IMG/VR virus record: IMGVR_UViG_3300037502_002993
Coordinates: 1 to 64,000 of that record
DNA length: 64,000 bases
Reading direction: 5' to 3' (one strand)
Part shown: positions 176-51,528 of the stretch, one piece after another
Layout: every line of letters starts with the position of its first letter
Numbering within the stretch: position 1 is the stretch's first letter
Notes under the pieces: generated by a model
Databases searched by the model: none
What the model saw: only the letters and a program-made list of their open reading frames with translations
Told to the model about the DNA's origin: nothing
Made by a program: the position numbers and the translations under genes

Positions 176-1633
176 ATGTCAAACTACGTATTGGTGTTAG
201 ACACTAATCGACAGCCCTTAGCACCGTGCCATCCGGCACGCGCCAGGGAGTTATTACGCAAGGGGAAAGCGGTCGTCTTCAGACGGTACCCCTTTACGAT
301 CATTCTTAACTATGTTCCTAAGGGGTCGATTCGGAACGAGTTCTCGATTCAGATCGACCCTGGCAGTAAAACCACAGGCATTGCGGTGATCTCCCATGAT
401 AAACGGGGAGATCGCTGTATCCTCGGGATCAATCTGGAACACCGGGGAGAGATAATTAAGAAACGACTTGCGGATAGAACGCTTTATCGTCGATCAAGAC
501 GTTCACGTAAAACAAGATATCGCCAACCGCGTTTCTTAAACCGTACTAAACCCAAAGGGTGGCTCCCACCCTCCGTGATGCACCGAGTACTGACGACTCA
601 GACGTGGATTGACCGCTTCATGCGATGGTGTCCCATCACCAACGCAAAGATCGAGGAGGTCAAATTTGACACGCACTTACTGAAAAGCCCGGAGGTGAAA
701 GGGAGGAGGTACCAGTTCGGTAAGCTCTTCGGCACGGAAATGCGGGAGTATTTGTTGTATCGCTATCAGCATACCTGTCAATATTGTCTTGGTGTCTCAG
801 GGGATAAGATTCTGCAATGGGAGCACAAGGTTCCCCGCTCCAGAGGGGGCTCTAACAGCGAGATGAACGCCACCCTCTCCTGTCGTCGTTGTAACTCTGA
901 GAAAGGAAACCTCACGCCAGAAGAATGGCTGCGCGCCATTGGCAAACCCAGAACCAAACTGGACAAGGTCTGGATAAAAACCCTTCCTAAAATCATCGCG
1001 CAAAAGAAACCCCCGCTGCGCGATGCCGCGGTGATGAATGCGACTCGCTATCGGTTGTTTGATTACCTAGAGTTAGTAGGACTCACCCCCACGTTACATC
1101 CGGGATGGGTGACCAAACGCAATCGCTTGGACCAGGGGTATCGAAAAGACCACTGGATCGATGCGACTTGTGTTGGGAGTGTGGGGAGTCGAGTCTACAT
1201 TCCGAAAGGAATGAGGGTGTTATCAGTCAAAGCCATGGGCCATACTTCACGAGTGATGTGTCGTCCCGATCGCTTTGGGTTTCCAAGAACCCGTCCGAAA
1301 GGACCGTCACGAGCGTTTACATTTAAAACTGGGGACGTCTGTAAAACCAAAATACCCACCGGCAAATATCTTGGAGGATGTATTGGTCGTTTAGTAGTCA
1401 GAAGTTCCGGTAAGTTTAGATTAAACGGAACTCCAGTCCATTATCGCTTCGTTGTTAGAATACAACACCGCGATGGGTATTCTTACCAAAATGGTGGTTT
1501 TTCCCACGCTGTTATTATAACACACACCTGCGACCCACTTCCTAAAAATAGTGGACGTGTTTTAAAGAAAACCCGTAGTGGAGATAGTGACGTGGTCATA
1601 ACTAGGAAGAAGTTCGCAATTAACTCGCCTTAG
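176..1633 (+). CDS. iscB: IscB RNA-guided endonuclease (IS200/IS605 family)
   Basis: N-terminal VLVLD..PLAPCHPARARELL (PLMP/RRXRR-like), RuvC-I IDPGSKTTG, Arg-rich helix RRSRRSRKTRYR, RuvC-II EEVKFD, HNH CQYC..EHKVPRSRGGSN..CRRCN, RuvC-III HWIDA. Confidence 0.93.
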   Translation: MSNYVLVLDTNRQPLAPCHPARARELLRKGKAVVFRRYPFTIILNYVPKGSIRNEFSIQIDPGSKTTGIAVISHDKRGDRCILGINLEHRGEIIKKRLADRTLYRRSRRSRKTRYRQPRFLNRTKPKGWLPPSVMHRVLTTQTWIDRFMRWCPITNAKIEEVKFDTHLLKSPEVKGRRYQFGKLFGTEMREYLLYRYQHTCQYCLGVSGDKILQWEHKVPRSRGGSNSEMNATLSCRRCNSEKGNLTPEEWLRAIGKPRTKLDKVWIKTLPKIIAQKKPPLRDAAVMNATRYRLFDYLELVGLTPTLHPGWVTKRNRLDQGYRKDHWIDATCVGSVGSRVYIPKGMRVLSVKAMGHTSRVMCRPDRFGFPRTRPKGPSRAFTFKTGDVCKTKIPTGKYLGGCIGRLVVRSSGKFRLNGTPVHYRFVVRIQHRDGYSYQNGGFSHAVIITHTCDPLPKNSGRVLKKTRSGDSDVVITRKKFAINSP

Positions 1634-3046: not shown

Positions 3047-3694
3047 TTAAAAATCTAGATAGTATATTTCCTTGAGATAAGTTTGGAGTGTACTAACTGG
3101 AGCTGATTCACCGCTATTGAACGTAACGTGTAACATGGCCACACCTACCCTTTCACCGTCTTCAATGGAGGTACAGTGTTTGAGAGGGATATAATCCAAC
3201 GGAATTCCTGTTCTTCTGGGATCGATGAAGAGGACCCCCTCGTCTCGAAGTTTCATCCAACATTCCCCTGTAGTTAATTCACCCTTTCCGACAGGAAAGT
3301 CAGTCCAGATAACACGACCGTCAGCTGTAGTGGAGTAGACGTAACTACTATCATCATTATCGATCCATTTAACAAGGCGTGGGTCGATCCAAACCTCACC
3401 CCCACACTCAACTACAGTGGGGAGAAGACTTAAGGAGGTGTTATCTACGGTAATGGGGAGTGTGTCCCGATCCAACACATCGAAGCGTACAGTGAAGCCT
3501 CCTTTAATCAGGGTTACAGTAACCTCACTTGATGCCGAACTAACGGTATCAGCGATGAGTATCTTCTTAAAGTATAACTTTAAATAACTAAGTCCTTGGG
3601 TCTGGGTGTGTTTGACCGTAAACCAACAACCTCGATGGCTGAAGTGGTACCAGCGTGTAACTGTAGTGTTGTCCATATTTACCTCTTCGTTCAT
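3047..3694 (-). CDS. Hypothetical protein
   Basis: 215-aa ORF followed by a GGGGACC-TTCG-GGTCCCC hairpin. Confidence 0.7.
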   Translation of the reverse strand: MNEEVNMDNTTVTRWYHFSHRGCWFTVKHTQTQGLSYLKLYFKKILIADTVSSASSEVTVTLIKGGFTVRFDVLDRDTLPITVDNTSLSLLPTVVECGGEVWIDPRLVKWIDNDDSSYVYSTTADGRVIWTDFPVGKGELTTGECWMKLRDEGVLFIDPRRTGIPLDYIPLKHCTSIEDGERVGVAMLHVTFNSGESAPVSTLQTYLKEIYYLDF

Positions 3695-3697
3695 TGT

Positions 3698-3985
3698 TTA
3701 AAGATATCGAGCTGCTTTGTTGGTTAGGTCCTCTAGGCGTTGTTCGAGGTCCTCCACCATTGGACGCAGTCCCCCACTGGCATCCTCGTCCAAGATCGTG
3801 ACCATTTGCTCTATCGCATCCAATTTACCCTGGAGTGTTTCCACATCCCTCAGCTTCAATGTTTCCACTATGTCACGTCCAGTGTCGTTGGCAAACAAAT
3901 AAAACACCTTGAACAGGTCACCGTGGATACTAGTTACATTGGAGTTTAGTGCATGCCAACGGTCGACGACTCCCCCAACATCACC
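3698..3985 (-). CDS. Coiled-coil ORF, in-frame continuation of 3986..4615 beyond its TAA
   Basis: Same frame as the upstream gene and open from 3985 to the stop at 3698. Confidence 0.5.
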   Translation of the reverse strand, partial: GDVGGVVDRWHALNSNVTSIHGDLFKVFYLFANDTGRDIVETLKLRDVETLQGKLDAIEQMVTILDEDASGGLRPMVEDLEQRLEDLTNKAARYL

Positions 3986-4615
3986 TTACTCCTCCATTGG
4001 CTGTGAGAGGTGCTCTTCGAGCTCCTCATCTGTTACAGCTTCCAACACCACACGCCACCCATAATTCGCGAGCGTGCCCGAAGAAGCGTCCGTGAGCAGG
4101 CCCTCTGCAGACGAAGACCAACGGTAGACATGACAGTTGGGGTCGTCAGGGTCTGCCCCTTGAACCCAACTTGATCTACCTTCTCCGGAACCCAATCCTA
4201 AGTCATCATCGGTGTAGTTGACGTCCCACTTCCAGTTAAACGGATCGTCCACATGGATCGGATACATAAACCGATCCCATTCATCACTCGTTAGCAGGCG
4301 TATCTTGTAGCGGTGATTGCCAATAAATATAACCCTAGTGCCGTCTACCACACCGCCAGCCACTAGTGCATCATAAGAGACTGAGTGGACTAGAGTACGG
4401 ATAGATACGTATAGCGGCCTGCCATTGTCCTCGAATACTAGCCAACCCTGGTCTTCGTTGTGTGGGACTCCGTCTTCCAATCCAACCAACTCAATCAGCT
4501 CTGGGTAGGGGATCAGATCTTCTCCCGATATCACACCGTAAAAGCCAAGGGTGTTGTAACCATACTCTTTTCCTTCAAAACCTGGAACTGATGGATTAGT
4601 TGCTACCGTCTTCAT
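3986..4615 (-). CDS. Jumbo-phage GFYG..GWRxxL family protein (putative C-type-lectin-like fold; candidate DGR target)
   Basis: GFYG, WLVF, IRLL..EWDR, G.SSWVQG and GWRVVLE motifs; paralog of 4632..5396 and 43265..44089. Confidence 0.75.
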   Translation of the reverse strand: MKTVATNPSVPGFEGKEYGYNTLGFYGVISGEDLIPYPELIELVGLEDGVPHNEDQGWLVFEDNGRPLYVSIRTLVHSVSYDALVAGGVVDGTRVIFIGNHRYKIRLLTSDEWDRFMYPIHVDDPFNWKWDVNYTDDDLGLGSGEGRSSWVQGADPDDPNCHVYRWSSSAEGLLTDASSGTLANYGWRVVLEAVTDEELEEHLSQPMEE

Positions 4616-4631
4616 TTTAAATACCTCACTT

Positions 4632-5396
4632 TTAAGTTTGATTGCTATAGTTTCGAGCTTTCAGTTCTGATTCTACTCGAATCAATGTTTTTCGAAGGGA
4701 TGCAGTGCTGATCTGCGACCAGTTAATGTCATCGACTGCCCTAGAATCCACTGGTGTGTGGTCGAGATCCGCCCCCACGGTAGGCTGTGCTAACCCCACC
4801 GGCTCCAGCACCACACGCCACCCAACATTCGGGTGCGCGTCCGAAGAAAGGATCGCGATCCCGTTCTCTACAGACGAATACCCACGACAGACACGGTAGT
4901 GGGGGTAGTGACAGTTGGGGTAAATGGGGTACACCCCTTGAACCCAACTGGCCTGTCCATCTCCGGAGCCTACTCCTAAGTCATCATCGGTGTAATCACA
5001 CCCCAAATTTTGGCCGGTGGGGTCAGATACATGTAGCGGTGAAATGAGGTGGTCCCACTCCTCATTTTCAGGTATGCGTACCCGATAGTTAACCCCTCCA
5101 ATCTGATGGATGATTCTTGAACCATCCACTAGACCGCGCTCTTCCAACTCCCGAAAACTGACGCCGTAGGCAGTTGTCAACATGGATATGAAAAGTGGCT
5201 TTCCACGCCAGAAGAACTTCAGCCATTCTCCGTTTCTGTTATGTACTTTTTCGGGGTGTATGCCTGCCCATTCAGCGAGGTCTCCGTAACTGATTAGAGT
5301 TTTGGGATCTACCCGACCGAAGAATCCCAAATCACGATCTCCTAACAATAAAAGACGACCACCAGGCACTGTCTTTAGTAATTTGTTCATGTCCAT
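4632..5396 (-). CDS. Paralog of the same family (candidate DGR target)
   Basis: GFFG, WLKF, YRVR..EWD, SWVQG..RG..GWRVVLE motifs. Confidence 0.75.
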   Translation of the reverse strand: MDMNKLLKTVPGGRLLLLGDRDLGFFGRVDPKTLISYGDLAEWAGIHPEKVHNRNGEWLKFFWRGKPLFISMLTTAYGVSFRELEERGLVDGSRIIHQIGGVNYRVRIPENEEWDHLISPLHVSDPTGQNLGCDYTDDDLGVGSGDGQASWVQGVYPIYPNCHYPHYRVCRGYSSVENGIAILSSDAHPNVGWRVVLEPVGLAQPTVGADLDHTPVDSRAVDDINWSQISTASLRKTLIRVESELKARNYSNQT

Positions 5397-7980: not shown

Positions 7981-10560
7981 TTAAAGACGTAGGGTTCGGT
8001 GAGACTTGACTTTTCCGTGAAAGTAGGACTTCTTGTTGCGGTGATAGGCCAGGTGGTGAGGGATATCCACACAGACGAAGTAACACATCCGTGGGGTGAC
8101 CTCTGGAAAGTCCTTCAGTGGCCTCAGGCGCCCAAGGATCTGGAGGTTGTCCTTTTTGGAGTTCATGGCATGTAGCAACACCACCTCCTTTAAGTTCCTC
8201 ACATCTACCCCCGTGCCACTGCTCTTCGCTGTACTGACGGTAATGTCTTGCTTTAAGAGTTTGTTATACGGAATGCCCTGGTAGTAGGGTCCGATGGCGA
8301 ACTGCTGCTTGTAGTGAGCCCTGAGGGCCTCTGAGACCTTATCAATGAACGCGACCGTGGCACAGAGGACCAATGCCTTATGCCCCTTCTCAAACTCTCG
8401 AACAAACACCGCATCGAGCACCTTTACAATCTTTCGGATGTAGGCCTCAAACCGTGGCTTGTTCTTGAGCATCTGTGACTCGTAACGCATGTGAGAATAC
8501 ATCCCCCGCATGGGTACGAGAAAGTCCCGTTGATGGATGGGTAGGTCATTATACAGCAGACCAATCACATCTTGATAGACCTTGTGTTCAGGTAGTTGAC
8601 AATGGGTCTCCTCTGGCAGCATGACATTGATCATACCTGTGACGAAATCATTCCCCGTGAACGGCGTAGCTGATAGGTTAATGATTTTACGTACATTGGA
8701 GAATAGATCAATCCGAAAGTAAAGGCCCGGGTCCTCCTGGATCTCGTCATTGATCTGCACACCTATGCCCGCTACCTCATGGAAGGTCGTGGGAAGACAC
8801 CCGTACTCTTCTAAACACGCCTGCTCCCCGTTTTCTTCGAGGTAGTTCAGAAACGCCCGGTAGGTGGCATTACTGATCATAACGCAATCAGCCTTCACCT
8901 TGCCCTCAAGCGCCTGACGGATGAACGCCTTGAGCTTGGGCGATCCATCGATGGTGTAATAACGATGCTCGACCCTTTTCTTTCCAAAGGCGTCATTAAG
9001 GGTCCCTACCCACAGATCAAAGTACTTAGGGGGGATCATAATCGCGAAGCGCATACCGAGTGCAACACATGCTAACATGGTCGTAAGTGAGTTGTGGGTG
9101 ACGATAAAGTCATCAGTCACATAGAGATGATCCGGGTGTGCTATCGTGATACATTGGGTAGGTTCATCCCCAATATACTCAACTGACCGCACTCTAAGTT
9201 TGAGTTCCTCCGAGTACTGGTTGGTCTCTTCTAGACGATCACGTTTACGTGGTAATCGGAAGAGTTTCCGCTGTCGCGGGTGACGGATATTTACCTGGTA
9301 GGCGATGCGCCCGTTACGTTTCTCGCCATTGTGGGTATAAGTAGGGTTGCGTTCACTGATACTGGCAATACCACCGACCGAACGCACTAGGTACTGAACC
9401 TGGGCGGCCAATACTCGGCTGGTACTGCAGAAGGAGACTGTTCCACTGGTTCCTTTACCAGGTTTGTCTACAGTGCCGTCAGTGTCCATCAGGCCCTGGA
9501 GGATCGCATACCGCTGTTCCAGAGAGCCATGTAGGTATTCCTTGGGAATGAACTTCTCCCAACTCCGTCTACCCCACAGTCCGTAGTCTTTTAAGGCTGT
9601 CCGGTATGGGTGCCCTCCATTGGTATATCGGAGCGTGCGGGTTTTATGACCGATGTCATTCCAGTAACTACCTTCAGGCGCCTCAGCTAACACCTCATCG
9701 AAGATGAAATCGTCTAGTTTTGTTATGTTAATAACACCGTTACTAATACCCCCATCACCTAGGATGACTCCTAGTGAGTACGGAGGAATCTTAACATCCG
9801 CAGCCGGACCGTCTTCTGGTTTGCAGAGCGGTATGTACACGCGCGGATTCGGCATCTCACACAACCGCTTGACTTCCAGGGTATCGACTGTTCTCCATCT
9901 ACGGTGCGGAACCGTGTTCACATAAAACACTTTCCAAAGATGTTCAGGACCAGCGTCTGTGTAGCGTCCATCCCAAAAAGTGACTCGATAAAACGGCGTC
10001 ACTCCTTGCGGGTGAACGGCAGTTACTTGTGTGGTGGTGCCGTCCCAAGCAGTGACTTCAGTACCGACCTTCATATCCCCCATGGTGGACCACCCGCCAG
10101 GGATTTTGATCTTAGATGATAATGGCTGTTGCTTACCTCCACCGGTCTGAAGGTAAAGGGCATTGGAGTAACTGTCATTAGACAGGTCACTTACCAGGGG
10201 TATTTGATAATCGCGGGCCTCAATCCCCTTACGGATCTTAAGCTTGAGGGGCTCTGCCTTAGGTACGGCGCGATGGGTGTGGGTGATCACTCGTTCAACG
10301 TAACCGTATTCCTCGATGAAACGTAGGAAGTCAGGTAAGTGGTGTCGATGGAGATAGAGCACCTGACGATCATGGGTGAGGCCAAAGAAACGTTTCTTTA
10401 ATACCATTTCAACGCGACCAAAGCGGTCGGTCTCGGGCTCGACTAGTTTCAGCCCTTTTAGGTACTCACCGATGATCTCCAAGAACTTGGGCTCGTAGCC
10501 CGAAATGCGACACCCGTGGGTGTAGTGCTCAACGTGCAAAGAAAAAGCCATCAGTGTCAT
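7981..10560 (-). CDS. SF2 (UvsW-like) helicase, phiKZ gp75-like, containing an intein
   Basis: RDYQ, Walker A QTGGGK|S split by an intein, DEIQ, SATP, QILGRLR. Confidence 0.9.
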   Translation of the reverse strand: MTLMAFSLHVEHYTHGCRISGYEPKFLEIIGEYLKGLKLVEPETDRFGRVEMVLKKRFFGLTHDRQVLYLHRHHLPDFLRFIEEYGYVERVITHTHRAVPKAEPLKLKIRKGIEARDYQIPLVSDLSNDSYSNALYLQTGGGKQQPLSSKIKIPGGWSTMGDMKVGTEVTAWDGTTTQVTAVHPQGVTPFYRVTFWDGRYTDAGPEHLWKVFYVNTVPHRRWRTVDTLEVKRLCEMPNPRVYIPLCKPEDGPAADVKIPPYSLGVILGDGGISNGVINITKLDDFIFDEVLAEAPEGSYWNDIGHKTRTLRYTNGGHPYRTALKDYGLWGRRSWEKFIPKEYLHGSLEQRYAILQGLMDTDGTVDKPGKGTSGTVSFCSTSRVLAAQVQYLVRSVGGIASISERNPTYTHNGEKRNGRIAYQVNIRHPRQRKLFRLPRKRDRLEETNQYSEELKLRVRSVEYIGDEPTQCITIAHPDHLYVTDDFIVTHNSLTTMLACVALGMRFAIMIPPKYFDLWVGTLNDAFGKKRVEHRYYTIDGSPKLKAFIRQALEGKVKADCVMISNATYRAFLNYLEENGEQACLEEYGCLPTTFHEVAGIGVQINDEIQEDPGLYFRIDLFSNVRKIINLSATPFTGNDFVTGMINVMLPEETHCQLPEHKVYQDVIGLLYNDLPIHQRDFLVPMRGMYSHMRYESQMLKNKPRFEAYIRKIVKVLDAVFVREFEKGHKALVLCATVAFIDKVSEALRAHYKQQFAIGPYYQGIPYNKLLKQDITVSTAKSSGTGVDVRNLKEVVLLHAMNSKKDNLQILGRLRPLKDFPEVTPRMCYFVCVDIPHHLAYHRNKKSYFHGKVKSHRTLRL
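9091..10131 (-). mobile_element. Class 3-type intein with LAGLIDADG endonuclease (347 aa)
   Basis: Starts QQPLSSKI right after Walker A GK and ends VTHN|S; EHLW, TQCITI, and LAGLIDADG motifs LGVILGDGG and LQGLMDTDG. Confidence 0.9.
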
Positions 10561-13506: not shown

Positions 13507-13916
13507 CGAGATCTTCAAGTGGGGTCGTTACGCCCACCCCGCGGTGTGTCTCCCTCACGGGAGTCATCCGCTGCTCCAGGCTTTCCCTGGATGCCGAGAC
13601 TATCTCTTGATCCTCTCCCAGATGGAGTAGGACCCTCCCCATTTCCCCGACCGATAACTTGCCGGGTACAGGCTGGTAAGACCTTAGTCGTTGAGCACAT
13701 CCCATATCCATCCGCAGGGAATGGACTTAGGGACTTCGCTGCGGATTACCCATTTCACTCCAGGGACTGGAGATCATCCTTACGCTTTTTACCGCACCCA
13801 AGTAGTTAGCTTGGACCCCGTGGGGTGTCTGACGACACCGGTCACTCTTTCGAGCACGAGTTGGTACGTAAGGCTTTAGTGGCTTCCCGCGATTAGAGGA
13901 GGTTCACTCAGGACTC

Positions 13917-14736
13917 TCATCCTGAGCGGGCCGTAGGTACGTAATAATGCAATCGGTATCCTTCCACAACGCGACATCTAGCGATTGCTTTGATGACGTC
14001 GTTTTTACTTCCAAGGGTATTGGAAAAGTGTTCAGCTGCTTTAGTGATATTGGTGAAGAACAACTCACCGCCTTCATTGTCAACAGCAATCACACCACGG
14101 GCACGGTTTTTGGGGTTATCTCTAAAGATGGCCAAATCCCGCTCGTTGAACTCCGGCCAGGGAGTGTCATCGCCCTCTTGACGAAACAGGTAGCCGTAGT
14201 AAGGCCTGTCCCATTTTTTCTTGATCTGATTAAGAAGTCCTCCAGGATACTCTAACCTTAAGTCTTCATTGACACTCCCCTTCTTTTAAGAAGGGGATTC
14301 TTGCTTCATTGAACTGACTTACCTTCGGTAAGGAAGGCAGTGGTCACTTTCTCCACAAGCGTTTAGTGAGTCCGTATGCCCTACGGCCTCTGCTAAAGTC
14401 ACACTCAATGGGCCAGCGATAGCGATACCCAATGTTTGATGGGTGGAGGTTATCCCAATTCCCATCGATGTGAAACGGTTCGACCTTCCACCAATGGTGA
14501 TAGCCTAGCCTTAACTTCCCAAACGCCGCCAGTACCAACAGAGCGACGGGGATTTCACTTATCACCCCTCCAGTGTTAACGCTAACTACCCACCCTAGCA
14601 TCTCATCAAAGCTAGGGGTTATTTCCACCCCGTTATGGAAAACCTGGCCGCTTTCCATAACCCTGACTTCCCCGGTAGTCAATGCCGGATCAATCAGTCC
14701 AAACCCTTGTTCGTTAGAAAGGTACTTTTCAAACAT
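13917..14736 (-). pseudogene. Intron-encoded HNH-type homing endonuclease, disrupted by a TnpB right-end insert
   Basis: N-terminal part 14409..14736 has HIDGNWDNLHPSNI; C-terminal part 13917..14267 is open for 116 codons with GYLF..PWP and a NUMOD1-like FTNITKAAEHF. Confidence 0.75.
14269..14408 (-). mobile_element. Stand-alone IS200/IS605 right end / TnpB omegaRNA, copy 1
   Basis: Near-identical to 50072..50212; ends GGGGAGTGTCAA on the minus strand; no tnpB and no left end. Confidence 0.88.
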
Positions 14737-27935: not shown

Positions 27936-28402
27936 CGGTGCCTTCAGTAGGGGGCGTTACTCCCTACCCGCTACCCTTCTGTCTCTCGACAGTAAGGCGC
28001 TGCTCCAGGTTTTCCCTGGATGCCGAGACTATATCTTCACCCGCCAGCTTTAGACTGGGTAGGGTGTCTTCCGTTTCCCCGCCCGATCACTTGGCAGGTA
28101 CAGGGGCCCGAATCCCTTAGTCGTTGGGCACATCCCATATCCCTGTAAAAGGAACTTAGGGACTTCGCTGCGTGATTCCCCATTTTGCCTTATCTAGCGC
28201 ATCCTCGTCTCTTTTACTGTACCGCTGTGGTTAGCAGCGCCCCTGTGGGGTGTCTGACGACACCGGTCACTCTTTCGAGCACAGGTTAGTGTACGAGGCT
28301 TTAGTGGGTTCCCGTCAATTAGGAAGAACACCGCCCAGAACTTTCATCCTGGGGGAACATTAGGAAAGTTTCTCCAATCGAGGTATTTTAACTTTCCTGT
28401 CT
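27936..28402 (-). ncRNA. Group I intron 1 of the beta' gene (467 nt)
   Basis: AATTGACGGGAA, AATCACGCAGC, GACTAAG and AAGATATAGTC core elements; starts after CCC AAT; its P1 pairing is not obvious by eye. Confidence 0.85.
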
Positions 28403-29756: not shown

Positions 29757-31736
29757 TCAGTAGTAACGACCGGAACCCGCCACGTTGCCCTGATAGACAT
29801 GCCCGCGGTTCTGGTTCACCGTGGAACCGCCCTGGTGAATGTGTGCCTGACCGTCCACCGCGAACTGACTCATGAACTGGTTGCCGGCGAAGCGCTGGTT
29901 GCCACCCAGGACCTGAGAGATGTTCTCCAGCTCGACCTGCAAACCAGCACCAGCAGTGGCATCGTCCAGTGCCTTGATGAAACCAGGCGTCAGCGCCAGA
30001 CGCGCAGCACGACCAGTCACCTCCACACGAGAGCCCGCGTACTGACGGGTCAGCTTCTCCAGGCGATCCAGGCGCATGGCAGCCGGCATGGTGCCGAAGC
30101 CGCCCGGGTTGTTGCCGCAGAAGATCGCGTACCACTCATCGAACGCCACCTGGTCGCCCTTGGTGATGTTGAGCATCGCCAGCACGTCCAGTTCACGCAG
30201 ATCGCGGATCTGACCCTGATCATCCACCCAGCGACCCAGCAGGATCTCCTGGTTGGTGTGACGTACCAGTGGATCGCCCTCAGCAATGGCCTGGGAGAAA
30301 CGACCACTGGTCAGGTTATCAGCCGCGGCAATCAGACGCTTGCGTGCCTGGTTCTGGTACTTGCCAGGGGTGGCAGCGTCCAGCAGGAAGGTTTCGAAGG
30401 CGGAGTTCTCACTCATCGGCTGTACGTCGATGAGAAACGCCGGCATCGCTTCCATGGCATGACGAACGAACTCCAGGAAGTTCTGATCGGAGTAGTTCTT
30501 GGCCTTCAGGTCCACGTACTGGAACTCGGAGAAGGGCATCTTGTAGCCCAGTGCACCGATATCCTTCCAGTCCACCCCTTTCACACCCAGGCGCGGCTTG
30601 AGGGCTTCCAGCCAGGCGTAGTTGTAGGTCAGGCGGAATGCGTTGGACAGACCCAGCATGTAGAACTCACCCGTCTGGGACTGGATGTGCGGGGCCGGGC
30701 AGTTATTGGTGATGACCACAGTGGGCATGAAGGGTTGGGTCACCTGCTGCTGATTGGGAGAACCCCAACCGCCCTGCGGCTGACCACCGATGACACGACC
30801 GCCAGTGAACTCCACCCCAACGAAGCAGGACAGTTCATTGAGGGCGGTGTTCTCCTCGTAGAACTCATCCTCGTCCTTGGTATCCCCTTCGACCTGAGCG
30901 CCCATCCGCACAATCACGTCAGAGCGGATCGGATTGCCGACAATGTCGAACTTCGGCTCAGCAGTGAAGTCGAAAGAGGCTACGAAGCGGGTGTTGCTCG
31001 CTGCCTGACCGTTTTCGTTGATCGGCTTGAGGTCTTCGATACGGAAGGGCACTTCCCCAGCGAAGATCTGGATGCCATCGTCCACCCGGTTGACGGAATC
31101 GATCAGCAGGCGCTTGACCTCCACGGACTCCAGCTTGAAGTCGAAGTGACGTGGCACCAGAATGGGACCTGCGTCGATCGCGGTGACGTCACGACCTTCC
31201 GGCTGAATGCCCAGTTGGTTGAAGACGGTGTTGACCACCTTGGCCCAGTACTTCTCAGTGTAGACGTCCTGGCTGAAGGTTGTGACCTCGATCTGGGTCT
31301 GACCCACCCACTCCTTGCGCTTGCGCAGGGGGCGATCGGAATCCAGCATCACAACGCGGATGGCCACGGCGGTCTTCTGAGCGACCTGAGCGACCTTCAC
31401 CACCAGGATGGAACTACGACCCACACGGTGGGTTTCGGAGTCGAAGCGGATCAGGTGGAAGTCGTCGGGCATGCGCTGCATTTCGACTTCGGTTTTGTAG
31501 GCATCACGGATGGCGGTGAAGGCCTGGGAGGTGCGCTCTTCGCCACCGTCCATCTGACCGGAACGACGGAACACGGTGTTGATGTCACGGGGGTCGTTCA
31601 GGCCCCGTGCGGCGGGTTTGGGCGCTGCAGCACCCACATTACCGCCATAGCCAGTCGGACCACGACCCGTCGGCTGCGGTTGTGCCTTGGGCTGCTCGGG
31701 CTGGTTCTGGTTGCTTTCGTTATCGCGGATACCCAT
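29757..31736 (-). CDS. chmA: Chimallin, major nuclear shell protein (phiKZ gp54-like)
   Basis: 659 aa from MGIRDNE; directly upstream of the gp55-like gene; strong codon bias; disordered N-terminus; GNPIRSD, DIGALG, RDLRELD motifs. Confidence 0.85.
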   Translation of the reverse strand: MGIRDNESNQNQPEQPKAQPQPTGRGPTGYGGNVGAAAPKPAARGLNDPRDINTVFRRSGQMDGGEERTSQAFTAIRDAYKTEVEMQRMPDDFHLIRFDSETHRVGRSSILVVKVAQVAQKTAVAIRVVMLDSDRPLRKRKEWVGQTQIEVTTFSQDVYTEKYWAKVVNTVFNQLGIQPEGRDVTAIDAGPILVPRHFDFKLESVEVKRLLIDSVNRVDDGIQIFAGEVPFRIEDLKPINENGQAASNTRFVASFDFTAEPKFDIVGNPIRSDVIVRMGAQVEGDTKDEDEFYEENTALNELSCFVGVEFTGGRVIGGQPQGGWGSPNQQQVTQPFMPTVVITNNCPAPHIQSQTGEFYMLGLSNAFRLTYNYAWLEALKPRLGVKGVDWKDIGALGYKMPFSEFQYVDLKAKNYSDQNFLEFVRHAMEAMPAFLIDVQPMSENSAFETFLLDAATPGKYQNQARKRLIAAADNLTSGRFSQAIAEGDPLVRHTNQEILLGRWVDDQGQIRDLRELDVLAMLNITKGDQVAFDEWYAIFCGNNPGGFGTMPAAMRLDRLEKLTRQYAGSRVEVTGRAARLALTPGFIKALDDATAGAGLQVELENISQVLGGNQRFAGNQFMSQFAVDGQAHIHQGGSTVNQNRGHVYQGNVAGSGRYY

Positions 31737-31957
31737 GAGGGCTTTCTCCTTGCGTTTTATTGCAGTCGACTGCAATGCTGTCCAGTTAACTGGACGGCTC
31801 TTGCCTGTGAATGATGTGGGTTTCAAATCTGTTCGGATAAACCCACACCAGAATCCTTGCGTTACGACATACCGCTTAATGGCCTAGAAGGCCCGTGAGA
31901 CTGTCAGGTGACAATCCCCTATAAGATAACATTCCCAGTATTTTTCTACATGGGCAT

Positions 31958-34019: not shown

Positions 34020-35173
34020 TTGACACTCCCCCTCCTAAAGTAGGGGGATTCTTGCTTCATTGAACTGACTTACCTTCGGTGAGGAAGGCAGAGGCCCTGT
34101 TCTCCACAAGCGTTTAGTGAGTCCGTATGTCCTACGGCCTCTGCTGACTCATAGCTCAAGCTACATCTAAGCGGTGTTCTTGGATAAACACCGCCGTCAG
34201 TGTTTGTCTTAAGTGACTCGCTGGTGGGAGTTGTTCCAATGCCATGTTCCGCAGGTTGATGGCGGCATTGTGATCTCGATCATGCTGTGTTCCGCAACTA
34301 GGGCACTCCCACCAGCGTTCGTTCAGTTTAAGTTTGTTGGACCCTTCTAGTCGATGGTCACACGCACTGCACGTCTGTGTACTCGGAAAGAATCTCTCTG
34401 CAATGACGACCTTGCAGTGCTGCGACTCATCGGCCTTGTAGACCAACATGGACAGGAACTGACGCCATCCACAATCAGCAATGTGTTTGGCTAGACGTCG
34501 GTTCCTGACCATGCCTTCAATGTTGAGGTTCTCAATAGCAATGGTCATGCATTGGTCTACAAGACCTCTGGAGAGCTTGTGCTGAAAGTCCATCCGACAC
34601 CGCTTGGTTTTTGCGTATATCTTGGCGACTTTCAGCCGTTGTTTTCTGTAGTTGGCACTACCCCTCACCATTCTTGCTAACTTCCGTTGTGCTCGTGCCA
34701 ACCTGACCGCATGTTTCTGTTGGTATTTGGGATTGTCATACTCCTTCCCTTCTGAGTCTACCGCAAAGGTCTTAATCCCTAAGTCCAATCCCAAATGAGA
34801 CTCCCCATTCGTGAGTCTTGGTTCACATTCACAAATGAAACAGGCGTAATATTCCCCACTAGACTCACGAATAATACTGACAGAACTGGGTGGGGTGGGG
34901 AGCACCCCACCCCACTTTTCGTTCTTGTAACTCCATTTAGTTTTGATAGGGGAATGCATTGCCTTAGCAATGCAGAATTCCCCACTCTCCAAATCTAAGG
35001 AGAATGCAGCGTTCGTCAGTCGGATGGACTGACGACTTTGTTTCTTTTTAAACTTGGGAAATCCAATCTTCCCTTTTCCTTTAAAGAAAGATTGGAAAGT
35101 TGTCCCGAGGTCCCTAAGAGACTGCTGCAAGATGACTGAGGAGACCTCATAGAGAAACCCATGCTCTTTCTTT
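34020..35173 (-). mobile_element. 5'-truncated tnpB element, copy 2 (right end/omegaRNA at 34020..34155)
   Basis: Colinear with 50072..51232; homology stops at 35173; no left end. Confidence 0.88.
34156..35173 (-). pseudogene. tnpB: TnpB lacking about 68 N-terminal residues
   Basis: RuvC GLDLG, IENL, DRDHNAA and the Zn finger are retained; in-frame TAA just upstream and no native start. Confidence 0.85.
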
Positions 35174-43264: not shown

Positions 43265-44089
43265 ATGAAAAGCAAGCTACAAATCGGCAGTACTGCGGAT
43301 AACAATCAACTCAACCTGCCTTCTGGGATGTTGACTATTGACCGGGAGCGTAACGCGCTCCGACTGTTCGATGGAGAAACCCAAGGCGGCTTTGAGGTCC
43401 TGGGAACACGGGCCTATGAGCCCTCACCTCCTGGACCCACTGAGTTAATTGCGGGTGATTTAACCACTGGTTTTTATGGCGAGGTGGGGCCTGAGGAGTT
43501 CATCACCTACGGTGCCCTGAGTACCTTGGTTGGGTTGAGTGCGGGGACCCTCCAGCATGATGCTGAATCCCTCTGGCTGAAGTTCTCCCTCGATGGGTCC
43601 CCGCTGTACGTCATGAAGAAGCCTGCACGACACACGGTGTCGTGGGATCAGCTGCACGCAGCGGGCCTGGTCTTTGGGACCAACACTGTGGAGATTGATG
43701 GACTCACCTACCAGGTCCGCCTGCTCCGTGGCGCTGCCTCCGACCCCACCACCGATGCCACGGGTTGGGACCTCCCCACCAGCCACGGGTCGGAGTGGAA
43801 CCGGTTGTTGTACCCCATCCACTCCGGTGTGCACACCGACACCAGTAACCCCAGTGTGCACACCGACCCCACTGCCGCGCCTTTCGGCGCCTGGGCGCAG
43901 TACAGTGACAGTGATTTGGTATTACGTGGTACCGACAATGGTCGCGCCAACTGGTGTCAAGAAACCACCGCCACCAGCACCCAGCGCGTGTCTCGTGGTT
44001 CTGGTGTTACGTCCTTGTCTCGCTCCACCTCTTCGGGTACGGCTTCGCTTTTCGGTTGGCGTGCCGCTCTAGTCTTCGTTGGCGACTAG
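43265..44089 (+). CDS. Putative virion/tail protein of the GFYGEV..GWR family; candidate DGR target
   Basis: N-terminal LRLFDGETQGG module; GFYGEV, WLKF, SEWNRLLY, WCQE..RG..GWRAAL; adenine-depleted 3' end. Confidence 0.8.
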   Translation: MKSKLQIGSTADNNQLNLPSGMLTIDRERNALRLFDGETQGGFEVLGTRAYEPSPPGPTELIAGDLTTGFYGEVGPEEFITYGALSTLVGLSAGTLQHDAESLWLKFSLDGSPLYVMKKPARHTVSWDQLHAAGLVFGTNTVEIDGLTYQVRLLRGAASDPTTDATGWDLPTSHGSEWNRLLYPIHSGVHTDTSNPSVHTDPTAAPFGAWAQYSDSDLVLRGTDNGRANWCQETTATSTQRVSRGSGVTSLSRSTSSGTASLFGWRAALVFVGD

Positions 44090-50071: not shown

Positions 50072-51528
50072 TTGACACTCCCCTTCTTAAAAGAAGGGGA
50101 TTCTTGCTTCACAGAACTGACTTACCTTCGGTAAGGAAGGCAGAGGCCACTTTCTCCACAAGCGTTTAGTGAGTCCGTATGCCCTACGGCCTCTGCTAAA
50201 GTCACTACTCAAGCTACATCTAAGCGGTGTTCCTGTAAGAACACCGCAGTCAGTGTGTTCCTCAAATGGCTCGCTGGTGGGAGTAGCTCCAATCCCATCT
50301 TCTTAAGATTGATAGCGGCATTGTGATCACGATCATGTTGAGCGCTACAACTGGGACACTCCCACCAACGCTCGCTGAGCTTGAGTTTGTTCTTACCATG
50401 TAGTCGATGGCCACACGCACTGCAAGTCTGTGTACTCGGGAAGAATCTCTCTGCGATAATCACCTTGCAGTGCTGCGACTCATCGGCCTTGTAGATCAGT
50501 TGGGACAGGAACTGCCGCCATCCACAATCACTGATGTGTTTAGCGAGTCTCCTGTTCCTGACCATGCCTTCAATATTCAAGTTCTCAATAGCTATTGTGG
50601 AGCATTGGTCTACAAGGTTACGAGAGAGCTTATGCTGAAAGTCTAACCGACACCGCTTGGTTTTTGCGTATATTTTAGCGACTTTCAGCTGTTGCTTTCT
50701 GTAGTTACTGGAACCTTGCTTTTTCCTAGCAAGAGAGCGTTGCGCCCTCGCCAGTCTCCTGGCGTATTGCCCTTGGTATTTGGGATTGGCATATTCCCTT
50801 CCTTCTGAGTCCACGGCAAAGGTCTTAATCCCCAAATCCAATCCCAAATGGGCGTCTCCATTCGTGAGCCGGGGTTCACACTCGCAAATGAAACACGCGT
50901 AGTACTCTCCATTGGACTCACGAATGATACTGACAGAACTGGGTGGGGTGGGGAGGACCCCACCCCACTTCTCATGCTTCTGTTTGTAACTCCATTTAGT
51001 TTTGATAGGGGAATGCATGGCTTTAGCCATGCGGAATTCTCCACTCTCCAAATCTAAGGAGAATGCAGAGTTCGTCAGCCGGATGGACTGACGACTGAGT
51101 CGTTTTTTAAACTTGGGAAATCCAACTTTCCCTTTCCCTTTGAAAAAGGATTGGAAAGCAGTCCCGAGGTCCCTAAGGGACTGTTGTAAGATGACTGAGG
51201 AGACCTCATAGAGAAACCCATGCTCTTTCTTTAACTCGGGGAGTCTCACCACGAGTGCATTCGCACTCAGTTTGGGTTTCTCTAGTGTTGGGTTTGTCTG
51301 GTAAGCCTCATACTCCTCCCGTACCCTGTTGAGTACTTGATTCCAGACAAACCGTTTACAGCCAAATGACCTCGCCAGGAGGTCACGTTGTATGGCATTC
51401 GGATAGAGCCGAAAGCGAAACGCTTTCGTAACCATGATGACCTCCTGGGAAAGTGGATTGGTGTATATGTTAGTATTTAGTGGTCTTATATCCCCGCCAT
51501 AAATGACGGGGTTTTACGACCACAACTG
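50072..51528 (-). mobile_element. Complete tnpB-only IS200/IS605 (IS1341-group) element, copy 4
   Basis: Minus strand: TTAT|CAGTTGTGG left end with CCCCGTC-ATTTAT-GGCGGGG hairpin, tnpB, omegaRNA, right-end hairpin and TCAA; no target duplication. Confidence 0.93.
50209..51435 (-). CDS. tnpB: TnpB RNA-guided endonuclease
   Basis: KAFRFRLYPN, FGC.RFVWN, GFPKFKK, RuvC D (GLDLG), E (IENL) and D (DRD.NAA), CSAC..CPSC. Confidence 0.95.
   Translation of the reverse strand: MVTKAFRFRLYPNAIQRDLLARSFGCKRFVWNQVLNRVREEYEAYQTNPTLEKPKLSANALVVRLPELKKEHGFLYEVSSVILQQSLRDLGTAFQSFFKGKGKVGFPKFKKRLSRQSIRLTNSAFSLDLESGEFRMAKAMHSPIKTKWSYKQKHEKWGGVLPTPPSSVSIIRESNGEYYACFICECEPRLTNGDAHLGLDLGIKTFAVDSEGREYANPKYQGQYARRLARAQRSLARKKQGSSNYRKQQLKVAKIYAKTKRCRLDFQHKLSRNLVDQCSTIAIENLNIEGMVRNRRLAKHISDCGWRQFLSQLIYKADESQHCKVIIAERFFPSTQTCSACGHRLHGKNKLKLSERWWECPSCSAQHDRDHNAAINLKKMGLELLPPASHLRNTLTAVFLQEHRLDVA

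What the first reader, a model, noticed from the sequence alone, without database searches (positions are those of the whole stretch)
4040..4900. DGR-like hypermutation signature between two tandem paralogs
Seen: the 20 codons before GWRVVLE (4061-4120 versus 4824-4883) differ at 19 nucleotides. All 19 are at codon positions 1-2 and none at position 3 (for example GGC/AAC, GAC/ATC, GCT/CTT, GCG/CCG, TAT/GTT). TCT TCG and GGG TGG CGT GTG GTG are invariant, while the upstream YTDDDLG region shows ordinary synonymous changes. Known: diversity-generating retroelements mutate adenines of AAY-rich templates and give this pattern in C-type-lectin-fold variable regions ending in a G(F/W)R motif. Inference: both genes were rewritten from one template, approximately AAC AAG AAC ACG AAC AAT TCT TCG AAC ACG AAC ACG AAT AAT GGG TGG CGT. 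That would imply a remote, multi-target DGR acting in a nucleus-forming jumbo phage. Two differences (TGG/GGG, GCA/GTA) may be non-adenine changes, and no template or RT is in the window.
Basis: partly seen in the sequence, partly recalled or inferred. Interest (0 to 1): 0.85.

Follow-up and report, generated by a model that had tools for sequence, protein, structure and literature searches.

The report
Retroelement-written variable regions, writer missing
Two neighbouring virion-type lectin-fold genes of a nucleus-forming jumbo phage carry the unmistakable footprint of a diversity-generating retroelement, but the template and reverse transcriptase that wrote it are absent from this genome, although an intact copy sits at the same locus in a related phage.

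Summary
The 20 codons before GWRVVLE in the two minus-strand paralogs (3986-4615 and 4632-5396) differ at 19 bases, none at a third codon position. Elsewhere in the genes 59% of third positions differ.

The proteins belong to a large phage family of lectin-fold domains. In cultured phiKZ-like phages its members are annotated as virion structural proteins. In other phages, family members are true DGR targets with Avd, template repeat (TR) and reverse transcriptase (RT). One of these is a chimallin-encoding relative that carries the whole cassette at the locus syntenic with this one. Its template adenines predict which positions vary here (p = 3e-5).

The same genome holds a second set of five such variable regions (VRs); one of them lies in the window at 43265-44089.

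No cognate template exists anywhere in the 220.6-kb contig, which closes on itself. No RT was found in the roughly 87% of the contig I could read. A divergent Avd gene and a 25-base template remnant survive at about 114.7 kb.

Best reading: these are footprints of a DGR that this lineage has lost or degraded, not a working remote DGR. The variable regions look oddly fresh, so a writer that was not found is not excluded.

The parts
3986..4615 (-). wA: 209-aa lectin-fold paralog, ending at an in-frame TAA (3986-3988). The ortholog in a relative reads on for 305 aa.
   Evidence: ORF list. Ortholog P0002/r305 is 78% identical across 305 aa, including the stretch beyond the stop. AlphaFold model pLDDT 89.6.
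4061..4138 (-). Variable region of wA (codons -26 to -1 before GWRVVLE).
   Evidence: differences confined to codon positions 1-2 and mapping onto adenines of the homologous template of L007.
4046..4060 (-). Invariant 3' anchor GGG TGG CGT GTG GTG of the wA variable region. In true DGRs of the family the template covers this part.
   Evidence: Identical in all seven set-1 variable regions. Template/variable-region homology runs 16-20 nt past the G codon in L007, L025, L076 and L032.
3698..3985 (-). Coiled-coil tail that is fused to wA's ortholog in the relative. Here a single TAA cuts it off.
   Evidence: tblastn of r305 aligns 4615-3701 in one piece. ORF 3698-3907. No Pfam family above threshold.
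4632..5396 (-). wB: 254-aa lectin-fold paralog in tandem with wA.
   Evidence: 40% aa identity to wA and 82% to r249 of the relative.
4824..4901 (-). Variable region of wB.
4809..4823 (-). Invariant 3' anchor of the wB variable region.
43265..44089 (+). w43: a third family paralog in the window. It belongs to a second set of five variable regions in this genome (tail GWRAxLV). Its variable region is about 43988-44053.
   Evidence: 17 of 19 variable positions of this set (computed on three of its five copies) fall on L007 template adenines, p = 2e-10.
29757..31826 (-). Chimallin (nuclear shell protein). It identifies the phage as the nucleus-forming type.
   Evidence: Pfam PF25677, E 3.4e-129. 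33-34% identical to annotated nuclear shell proteins of Noxifer, PA7 and PhiPA3.

Best explanation
wA and wB are tandem paralogs of a phage family of FGE-type C-lectin-fold binding domains; in cultured phiKZ-like phages these are virion structural proteins. The roughly 26 codons before GWRVVLE are a DGR variable region. In an ancestor, a reverse transcriptase copied a template-repeat RNA into cDNA, put random bases opposite the template's adenines (which lie in AAY and ACG codons), and the cDNA replaced this stretch of each target gene. That process changes codon positions 1-2 and leaves third positions as in the template. It would vary the ligand-binding face of the domain and hence, presumably, adsorption specificity.

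Shown: the footprint itself; homology to proven targets; the fold; a full cassette at the syntenic locus of a chimallin-encoding relative; and the absence of a cognate template from this contig.

Inferred: the writer was lost or degraded in this lineage, probably after its split from the closest relative, so the variable regions are now frozen.
For: 1. Footprint: 19 differences, 0 at third positions, against 59% third-position divergence in the flanks.

2. Family: the profile finds 1715 representative proteins, typically ending in GWRPVLEL at the C-terminus.

3. Proven targets: family members in L006/L007, L025, L076 and L032 have target, Avd, template repeat and RVT_1 RT. Template/variable-region mismatches fall at template adenines in 10/10, 15/20, 13/14 and 7/11 cases.

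4. Synteny: L007 shares the two helicase-like genes upstream and the 511/182/281/447-aa block downstream. Its contig encodes chimallin.

5. Adenine mapping: 14 of 21 wA/wB differences align with adenines of the L007 template, against 9 of 57 identical positions (p = 3.3e-5). For the second set the count is 17 of 19 (p = 2.3e-10).

6. Fold: model pLDDT 89.6. The best PDB match is TvpA (2y3c), followed by EgtB, PvdO and FGE. BFVD matches virion structural proteins of phiKZ-like phages at TM 0.74-0.86.

7. No writer: N-masked exact scans of all of IMG/VR return only the variable regions themselves, plus one unrelated chance match. No RVT_1 appears among window ORFs. The cassette RTs and Avds give no tblastn hit in about 192 kb of the genome, and no RVT_1 appears in the gene tables. 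The genome closes on itself, so nothing is missing at the contig junction.

8. Remnant: a 115-aa bAvd-like gene (E 1.5e-5) follows another paralog pair. Starting 39 nt after it is a 25-nt stretch 84% identical to the predicted set-2 template, with A at the variable positions, followed by scrambled sequence and an unrelated gene.
Against: About 28.7 kb of the contig (roughly 81.3-110.0 kb) could not be fetched, so an RT there is not excluded.

The variable regions look fresh. wA and wB show 0 and 1 third-position deviations from the leave-one-out consensus in 28 codons, where roughly 6 in total would be expected from the flank divergence to the relative.

In the second set, w43 and the 151.5-kb copy differ at 2 bases in the 231 upstream but at 12 in the 63-base variable region. 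An ortholog from another sample (P0279) differs mainly in the variable region.

These facts fit very recent or continuing activity. They could also arise from gene conversion of the flanks.

The PDB fold match is weak (E 1.8e-3, TM 0.34), and no Pfam lectin or FGE family is hit.
Confidence: 0.62

Rival explanations
1. A working DGR still diversifies these genes. Its RT would lie in the unread 13% of the genome, or the RT and template would sit on another replicon (a co-infecting phage, a satellite or the host) and act in trans on at least seven targets.
For: The variable regions look fresh: third positions are unchanged while the flanks diverged. Variable-region differences sit between nearly identical flanks in the second set. 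Variable regions differ between close orthologs: r293 versus P0004 has 21 position-1-2 changes in 26 codons, against 43 in 164 codons upstream of the variable region, and P0279 differs from the 151.5-kb copy mainly there. An intact Avd-like ORF persists.
Against: A DGR needs a cognate template. Masked scans that leave every variable position free and keep only positions invariant in all copies find none in the whole contig, for either set. True templates of this family do include the 3' anchor used in those masks. The only template-like stretch is 25 nt long and scrambled. No RT was found in about 87% of the genome. Two different templates would be needed for the two sets. Trans action from another replicon has no precedent that I know of (my own knowledge).
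Confidence: 0.2
2. No retroelement was ever involved. Diversifying selection on the binding loop, plus gene conversion that homogenises the flanks and silent sites, produced the pattern.
For: Recombination between paralogs plainly occurs, or assemblers produce such chimeras: P0278 joins the N-part of one paralog to the variable region and tail of another. Patches of near-identity are flanked by diverged sequence.
Against: Selection does not freeze third positions of codons whose amino acids differ. The variable positions coincide with the adenines of an independently verified template in a relative (p = 3e-5 and 2e-10). The register and the AAY/ACG codon design match true DGR templates of the family. 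An Avd remnant and a template remnant lie in the genome.
Confidence: 0.05
3. The two variable regions were exchanged as cassettes among the many paralogs of the genome by recombination. Diversity would then be shuffled from a standing pool rather than newly written.
For: There are at least nine family paralogs in this genome and a chimeric variant, P0278.
Against: No other copy in the genome resembles the wA or wB variable region; blastn-short finds only the pair itself. Shuffling cannot create position-1-2-only differences. It would only redistribute variable regions that a DGR had made.
Confidence: 0.08

Closest known systems
Bordetella phage BPP-1 DGR (Mtd target, Avd, TR, Brt reverse transcriptase)
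   Same: The variable region sits at the 3' end of a C-lectin-fold receptor-binding domain. Variation is confined to template adenines in AAY-type codons. Family relatives here show the same gene order: target, Avd, template, RT. Some family members carry an Mtd_N-like N-terminus below Pfam's cut-off.
   Different: This genome has no template and no RT. It has many targets in two sequence sets. In wA and wB the variable region is followed by a further 17-56 residues (about 110 in the full-length ortholog of wA), so it does not end the protein. The domain is not detectably related to Mtd in sequence.
Treponema denticola TvpA (PDB 2y3c), a DGR variable protein of the FGE-type C-lectin fold
   Same: It is the best PDB structural match to the wA model. 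It has the same kind of C-terminal variable loop ending in an aromatic-Arg motif. The T. denticola DGR is multi-target (my own knowledge).
   Different: The match is weak (E 1.8e-3, TM 0.34, 9% identity). There is no Pfam FGE-sulfatase hit. TvpA is a bacterial lipoprotein, not a phage virion protein.
Paralogous virion structural proteins of phiKZ-like phages (phiKZ gp83, PhiPA3 gp081, Noxifer gp078/gp079, RisingSun, EL, 201phi2-1)
   Same: Clear homology: tblastn 29-33% identity over 84-94% of wA. BFVD structural matches at TM 0.74-0.86. Several copies per genome. The Noxifer copies lie within genes annotated as virion structural proteins.
   Different: The matches in cultured phages carry no DGR annotation. 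None of the 200-320-kb IMG/VR loci examined has a template within 6 kb. [quoted passage not shown]
The intact DGR in chimallin-encoding contig IMGVR_UViG_3300009194_000005 (loci L007/L085; the same phage also appears as 3300027365_000009)
   Same: It occupies the same genomic neighbourhood. The target family is the same and the variable region is in the same register.
   Different: It has Avd, a template with 10/10 adenine-specific mismatches, and a 345-aa RVT_1 RT. Its targets are closest to the pair at about 115 kb in this genome (48-51% identity), not to wA or wB.

Membership tests
Diversity-generating retroelement (complete system in this genome) | A DGR-clade reverse transcriptase is encoded | tested here: not met
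   No RVT_1 among 49 window ORFs of at least 120 aa. tblastn with three family-associated DGR RTs finds nothing at E <= 0.1 in about 192 kb of the 220.6-kb genome. No RVT_1 in the precomputed gene tables. About 28.7 kb (81.3-110.0 kb) was not read.
Diversity-generating retroelement (complete system in this genome) | A template repeat cognate to the variable region | tested here: not met
   In the window only the two variable regions match, even with 3 mismatches allowed. Masked exact scans over all of IMG/VR, including the whole contig, return only the variable regions (for set 1; for set 2). blastn-short with the predicted templates finds only a 25-nt remnant.
Diversity-generating retroelement (complete system in this genome) | Variable-region/template mismatches lie at template adenines | tested here: inconclusive
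   The genome's own template is absent. By proxy, 14 of 21 wA/wB differences and 17 of 19 set-2 variable positions align with adenines of the homologous L007 template (p = 3.3e-5 and 2.3e-10).
Diversity-generating retroelement (complete system in this genome) | Accessory protein Avd next to the template | tested here: inconclusive
   None in the window. A 115-aa ORF at about 114.7 kb hits bAvd at E 1.5e-5 and 25.9 bits, below the 40-bit cut-off, covering profile positions 3-98 of 107. It lies just downstream of a paralog pair.
DGR variable-protein (target) family | Homology to proteins with a verified template/variable-region pair, with the variable block in the same register | tested here: met
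   Profile and alignment. Verified pairs in L006/L007, L025, L076 and L032. Codon-for-codon register with the L007 template.
FGE-sulfatase / C-type-lectin fold | Sequence match to Pfam FGE-sulfatase or DUF1566 | tested here: not met
   No Pfam family for wA. wB has only a chance-level hit. Ten other family members tested have no such hit either.
FGE-sulfatase / C-type-lectin fold | Three-dimensional fold similarity | tested here: met
   Model pLDDT 89.6. The PDB matches down to E about 0.5 are all of this fold: TvpA, SenA, EgtB, PvdO, CarF, PorK, FGE. Scores are weak (best E 1.8e-3, TM 0.34). BFVD also lists a sulfatase-modifying-factor-like protein and a DUF1566 protein far down the list.
phiKZ-like virion structural protein paralogs | Sequence and structure similarity to annotated virion structural proteins of cultured Chimalliviridae | tested here: met
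phiKZ-like virion structural protein paralogs | Physical presence of wA and wB in the virion | not testable with these tools
   Needs virion proteomics or cryo-EM.

The most novel reading that the evidence does not exclude
A DGR that is still active, and whose template and RT are not beside any target (in the unread 29 kb or on another replicon), rewrites at least seven virion lectin-fold genes scattered over a nucleus-forming jumbo phage genome, using two distinct templates. Retrohoming would then have to work on DNA enclosed in the phage nucleus.
Probability: 0.15. Interest if true: 0.85.

Novelty: new member of a known kind. Interest (0 to 1): 0.6.

Why it matters
DGRs are the only known dedicated protein-hypermutation systems of prokaryotes and their viruses. 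In the held paper library I found no report that links them to nucleus-forming (chimallin) phages, and a survey of jumbo phages reported no such lectin domains.

Three points follow from this work:
- The paralogous virion-protein family of phiKZ-like phages is a DGR target family.
- One chimallin-encoding phage carries a complete DGR at this very locus.
- A relative keeps seven or more written variable regions after losing the writer.

This gives a concrete system for two questions. Can reverse transcription and retrohoming work on a genome sealed in a protein nucleus? And how is host-range plasticity kept or frozen when the retroelement decays?

Tried and rejected
- A megablast of 12 kb of the window against cultured phages found nothing.
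- The first AlphaFold model, built from 7 sequences, was too poor (pLDDT 53.9) and its fold search was meaningless. It was redone with 48 sequences.
- A profile search of PDB sequences gave only chance hits in the coiled-coil tail.
- A metagenome pattern scan found nothing, not even the source contig, so that collection does not hold this sample. The protein-based metagenome scan gave one distant relative.
- The relaxed template mask hit one unrelated high-GC phage gene by chance.
- A search of the 5.8-billion protein set with an RT profile listed only the best 120 of 4310 hits, none from this contig. This is not informative about absence. The RT-based scan of IMG/VR listed the best 80 of 303, again none from this contig.
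- A weak tblastn hit of the L007 RT in L168 (24% identity over 79 aa) proved to be noise.
- No conserved hairpin was found just downstream of the variable regions, either here or in the true DGRs of the family, so that feature was dropped.
- Walking the contig was stopped by the look-up caps. The last look-up returned a short Logan contig and added under 1 kb.
- The sample SRR12611921 holds the same phage at 100% identity over every stretch compared, and may be the same dataset. It therefore gave no independent view of the variable regions.

Full report
**Where the window comes from**

The window is the first 64 kb of IMG/VR contig IMGVR_UViG_3300037502_002993, which is JGI Ga0310151_0000032 and is 220,598 bp long. 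It encodes:
- chimallin at 29757-31826 (Pfam E 3.4e-129),
- a PhuZ-type tubulin,
- the divergent family-B DNA polymerase of phiKZ-like phages.

Its chimallin is 33-34% identical to annotated nuclear shell proteins of Noxifer, PA7 and PhiPA3. The phage is therefore a distant, uncultured member of the nucleus-forming group.

**The observation**

The two genes lie on the minus strand. wA is 3986-4615 and wB is 4632-5396. Anchored on GWRVVLE, the 20 preceding codons differ at 19 bases: 10 at position 1, 9 at position 2 and none at position 3. Elsewhere the paralogs are old, with 86 of 145 third positions differing. The contrast is significant (Fisher p = 9.6e-8). Positions 1-2 are about as diverged inside the block as outside it. 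What is odd is therefore the frozen third positions, as if both blocks had been copied from one sequence and then altered only at chosen bases. The only inexact detail is that the YTDDDLG codons themselves are identical, and the silent changes lie beside them.

**What the proteins are**

Pfam finds nothing. A profile of seven close homologues finds 1715 representative proteins. Most carry the domain at the extreme C-terminus and end in GWRPVLEL.

With a 48-sequence alignment AlphaFold gives a confident model (pLDDT 89.6). Its best PDB match is TvpA of Treponema denticola (2y3c), a DGR variable protein. The next matches are EgtB, SenA, PvdO, CarF, PorK and FGE, all of the FGE-type C-lectin fold, though the scores are weak.

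Against predicted viral structures the model matches virion structural proteins of RisingSun, EL, PhiPA3, Noxifer, PS119XW, RSL2 and 201phi2-1 at TM 0.74-0.86. tblastn finds the domain in phiKZ gp83, PhiPA3 gp081 and others, often several times per genome. In Noxifer it lies within genes annotated as virion structural proteins, gp078 and gp079.

**The family is a true DGR target family**

An IMG/VR scan with a family alignment returned 79 loci. I compared each C-terminal block with its own surroundings. Five loci have a second, non-coding copy 450-500 nt downstream whose mismatches fall on its adenines:

| Locus | Mismatches at template adenines |
|---|---|
| L006/L007 | 10 of 10 |
| L076 | 13 of 14 |
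| L025 | 15 of 20 |
| L032 | 7 of 11 |

Where the flank is present, the gene order is target, Avd (bAvd E 1e-16 to 1e-19 in two of the loci), template, then a 345-377-aa RVT_1 reverse transcriptase. In all of them the template runs 16-20 nt past the G of the GWR motif. This matters for the masks described below.

**A relative with the cassette at this very locus**

L007 shares the two helicase-like genes upstream of wA and wB (52% and 48% identity). It also shares the block of 511-, 182-, 281- and 447-aa genes that, in the window's phage, lies across the contig junction. Another locus of the same phage carries phiKZ-type structural genes at 50-63% identity. The L007 contig encodes chimallin at 93450-96189, 42% identical to the window's. 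So a complete DGR exists in a chimallin-encoding phage, in the position where this window has wA, wB and three ORFs of no known family.

**Do the differences map to template adenines?**

Of the 21 positions at which wA and wB differ in the 78-nt stretch, 14 align with an L007 template adenine. Of the 57 identical positions only 9 do (p = 3.3e-5). Across seven set-1 variable regions (two from the window, four from relative L005, one from a Logan contig), 21 of the 23 template adenines are variable.

**A second set in the same genome**

The family scan also hit this contig elsewhere. Five further paralogs end in GWRAxLV: w43 in the window at 43265-44089, and copies at about 115.3, 136.5, 151.5 and 172.5 kb. 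They share nearly identical cores and differ in a 22-codon block. In three of these copies, 17 of the 19 variable positions fall on L007 template adenines (p = 2.3e-10). With two more divergent paralogs, the genome has at least nine family members.

**Search for the writer**

The window has no third copy of the block and no RVT_1.

I then scanned all of IMG/VR with patterns that leave every variable position free. The last masks keep only positions invariant in all known copies, plus the 3' anchor that true templates include. They returned only the variable regions themselves and one chance hit in an unrelated phage (for set 1; for set 2). The earlier masks were too strict, because they fixed a T that one relative shows to be variable. 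The conclusion therefore rests.

I walked the contig with exact-protein look-ups and reached about 192 of the 220.6 kb (map). None of the gene tables lists an RT. tblastn with three cassette RTs and three Avds finds nothing at E <= 0.1.

The far end of the genome is syntenic with what follows the wA ortholog in relative L005. A Logan contig of the same phage ends in the first 23 bases of the window. The genome therefore closes on itself, and nothing is hidden at the junction.

**A remnant**

Directly after the paralog pair at about 115 kb, which is the closest homologue of L007's targets, lies a 115-aa ORF that matches bAvd over nearly the whole profile. The match is below Pfam's cut-off (E 1.5e-5, 25.9 bits). 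Starting 39 nt after its stop, where templates begin in the intact cassettes, is a 25-nt stretch 84% identical to the predicted set-2 template, with A at exactly the variable positions. After that the sequence is scrambled, and the next gene is a DUF4376 protein, not an RT. This looks like a decayed cassette.

**What does not fit neatly**

The variable regions look fresh:
- wA and wB show 0 and 1 third-position deviations from the leave-one-out consensus over 28 codons, while the relative's copies show 3-5. Flank divergence would predict about 3 per copy.
- In set 2, w43 and the 151.5-kb copy differ at 2 of the 231 bases just upstream but at 12 of the 63 in the variable region.
- Orthologs in other samples differ mostly in the variable region.

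So the writer worked until recently. Alternatively, gene conversion homogenises the flanks while selection keeps the variable regions apart; a chimeric variant, P0278, shows that paralogs recombine or that assemblers merge them. I cannot separate these with sequence alone. Read mapping would.

**Verdict**

The signature is genuine, and it is a DGR signature. It lies in a virion lectin-fold family that is a DGR target elsewhere, including in a chimallin-encoding relative at the same locus. In this genome the template is absent, the RT was not found, and a remnant of the cassette is degraded. I put 0.62 on 'footprints of a lost or decayed DGR', 0.2 on a still-active writer that I did not find, and little on explanations without a retroelement. 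In the held library I found no report of DGRs in nucleus-forming phages. I rate the finding as a new member of a known kind.

Noticed in passing
window 176-1633 (+): A 485-aa protein with an RRXRR domain (E 9e-67) and an HNH domain, resembling an IscB-type nuclease. It sits right at the contig junction. The 175 bases upstream, plus the genome's far end, would hold any guide RNA. Rfam reported nothing there.
   Followed up: partly
window 34156-35130 (-) and 50209-51435 (-); repeats at 14269, 34020, 44652, 50072 and 34155-35173 / 50208-51232: Two TnpB-type ORFs (OrfB_IS605 plus Cas12f1-like TNB domain), with four copies of a 134-nt repeat beside or near them. A further TnpB lies at about 190 kb of the contig.
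   Followed up: partly
window 13574-13948 (-) and 28003-28379 (-): Two group I introns (Rfam RF00028, 73.8 and 65.5 bits). They explain repeat families D6, D7 and D9.
   Followed up: partly
window 7981-10560 (-): A helicase-like gene of 859 aa carries an intein-like insert with a LAGLIDADG domain. The orthologs in two relatives are 509-510 aa and align on both sides of the insert.
   Followed up: partly
window 3986-3988 (-): A single in-frame TAA ends wA where the ortholog has a Glu codon. The following 95 codons stay open and encode the coiled-coil tail that is fused in the relative. This could be a recent nonsense change, a read error, or a split or read-through gene.
   Followed up: partly
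window 43265-44089 (+): A third lectin-fold paralog with its own variable region. It is one of five near-identical-core copies spread over the genome.
   Followed up: yes
contig about 114.4-114.7 kb (L176 15867-16459): A divergent Avd-like ORF and a 25-nt template-like remnant follow another paralog pair. An unrelated DUF4376 gene sits where the RT would be.
   Followed up: yes
protein P0278 (1434-nt JGI contig): This protein is identical to the 151.5-kb paralog up to the variable region, and then identical to w43 through the variable region and tail. It is either a real recombinant between paralogs or an assembly chimera across the shared 231-nt core.
   Followed up: no
window 3047-3694 (-): A 215-aa ORF between wA and the conserved 194-aa gene. 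It has no Pfam match and is absent from the syntenic region of relative L005, so it is an insertion at the place where the relative L007 has Avd, template and RT.
   Followed up: partly
contig about 138.0-139.5 kb (L178 854-2371): A 505-aa protein with an RNase H domain (E 1.6e-25) and no RT domain. It may correspond to the RNase H-clamp protein recently described for this phage family.
   Followed up: no
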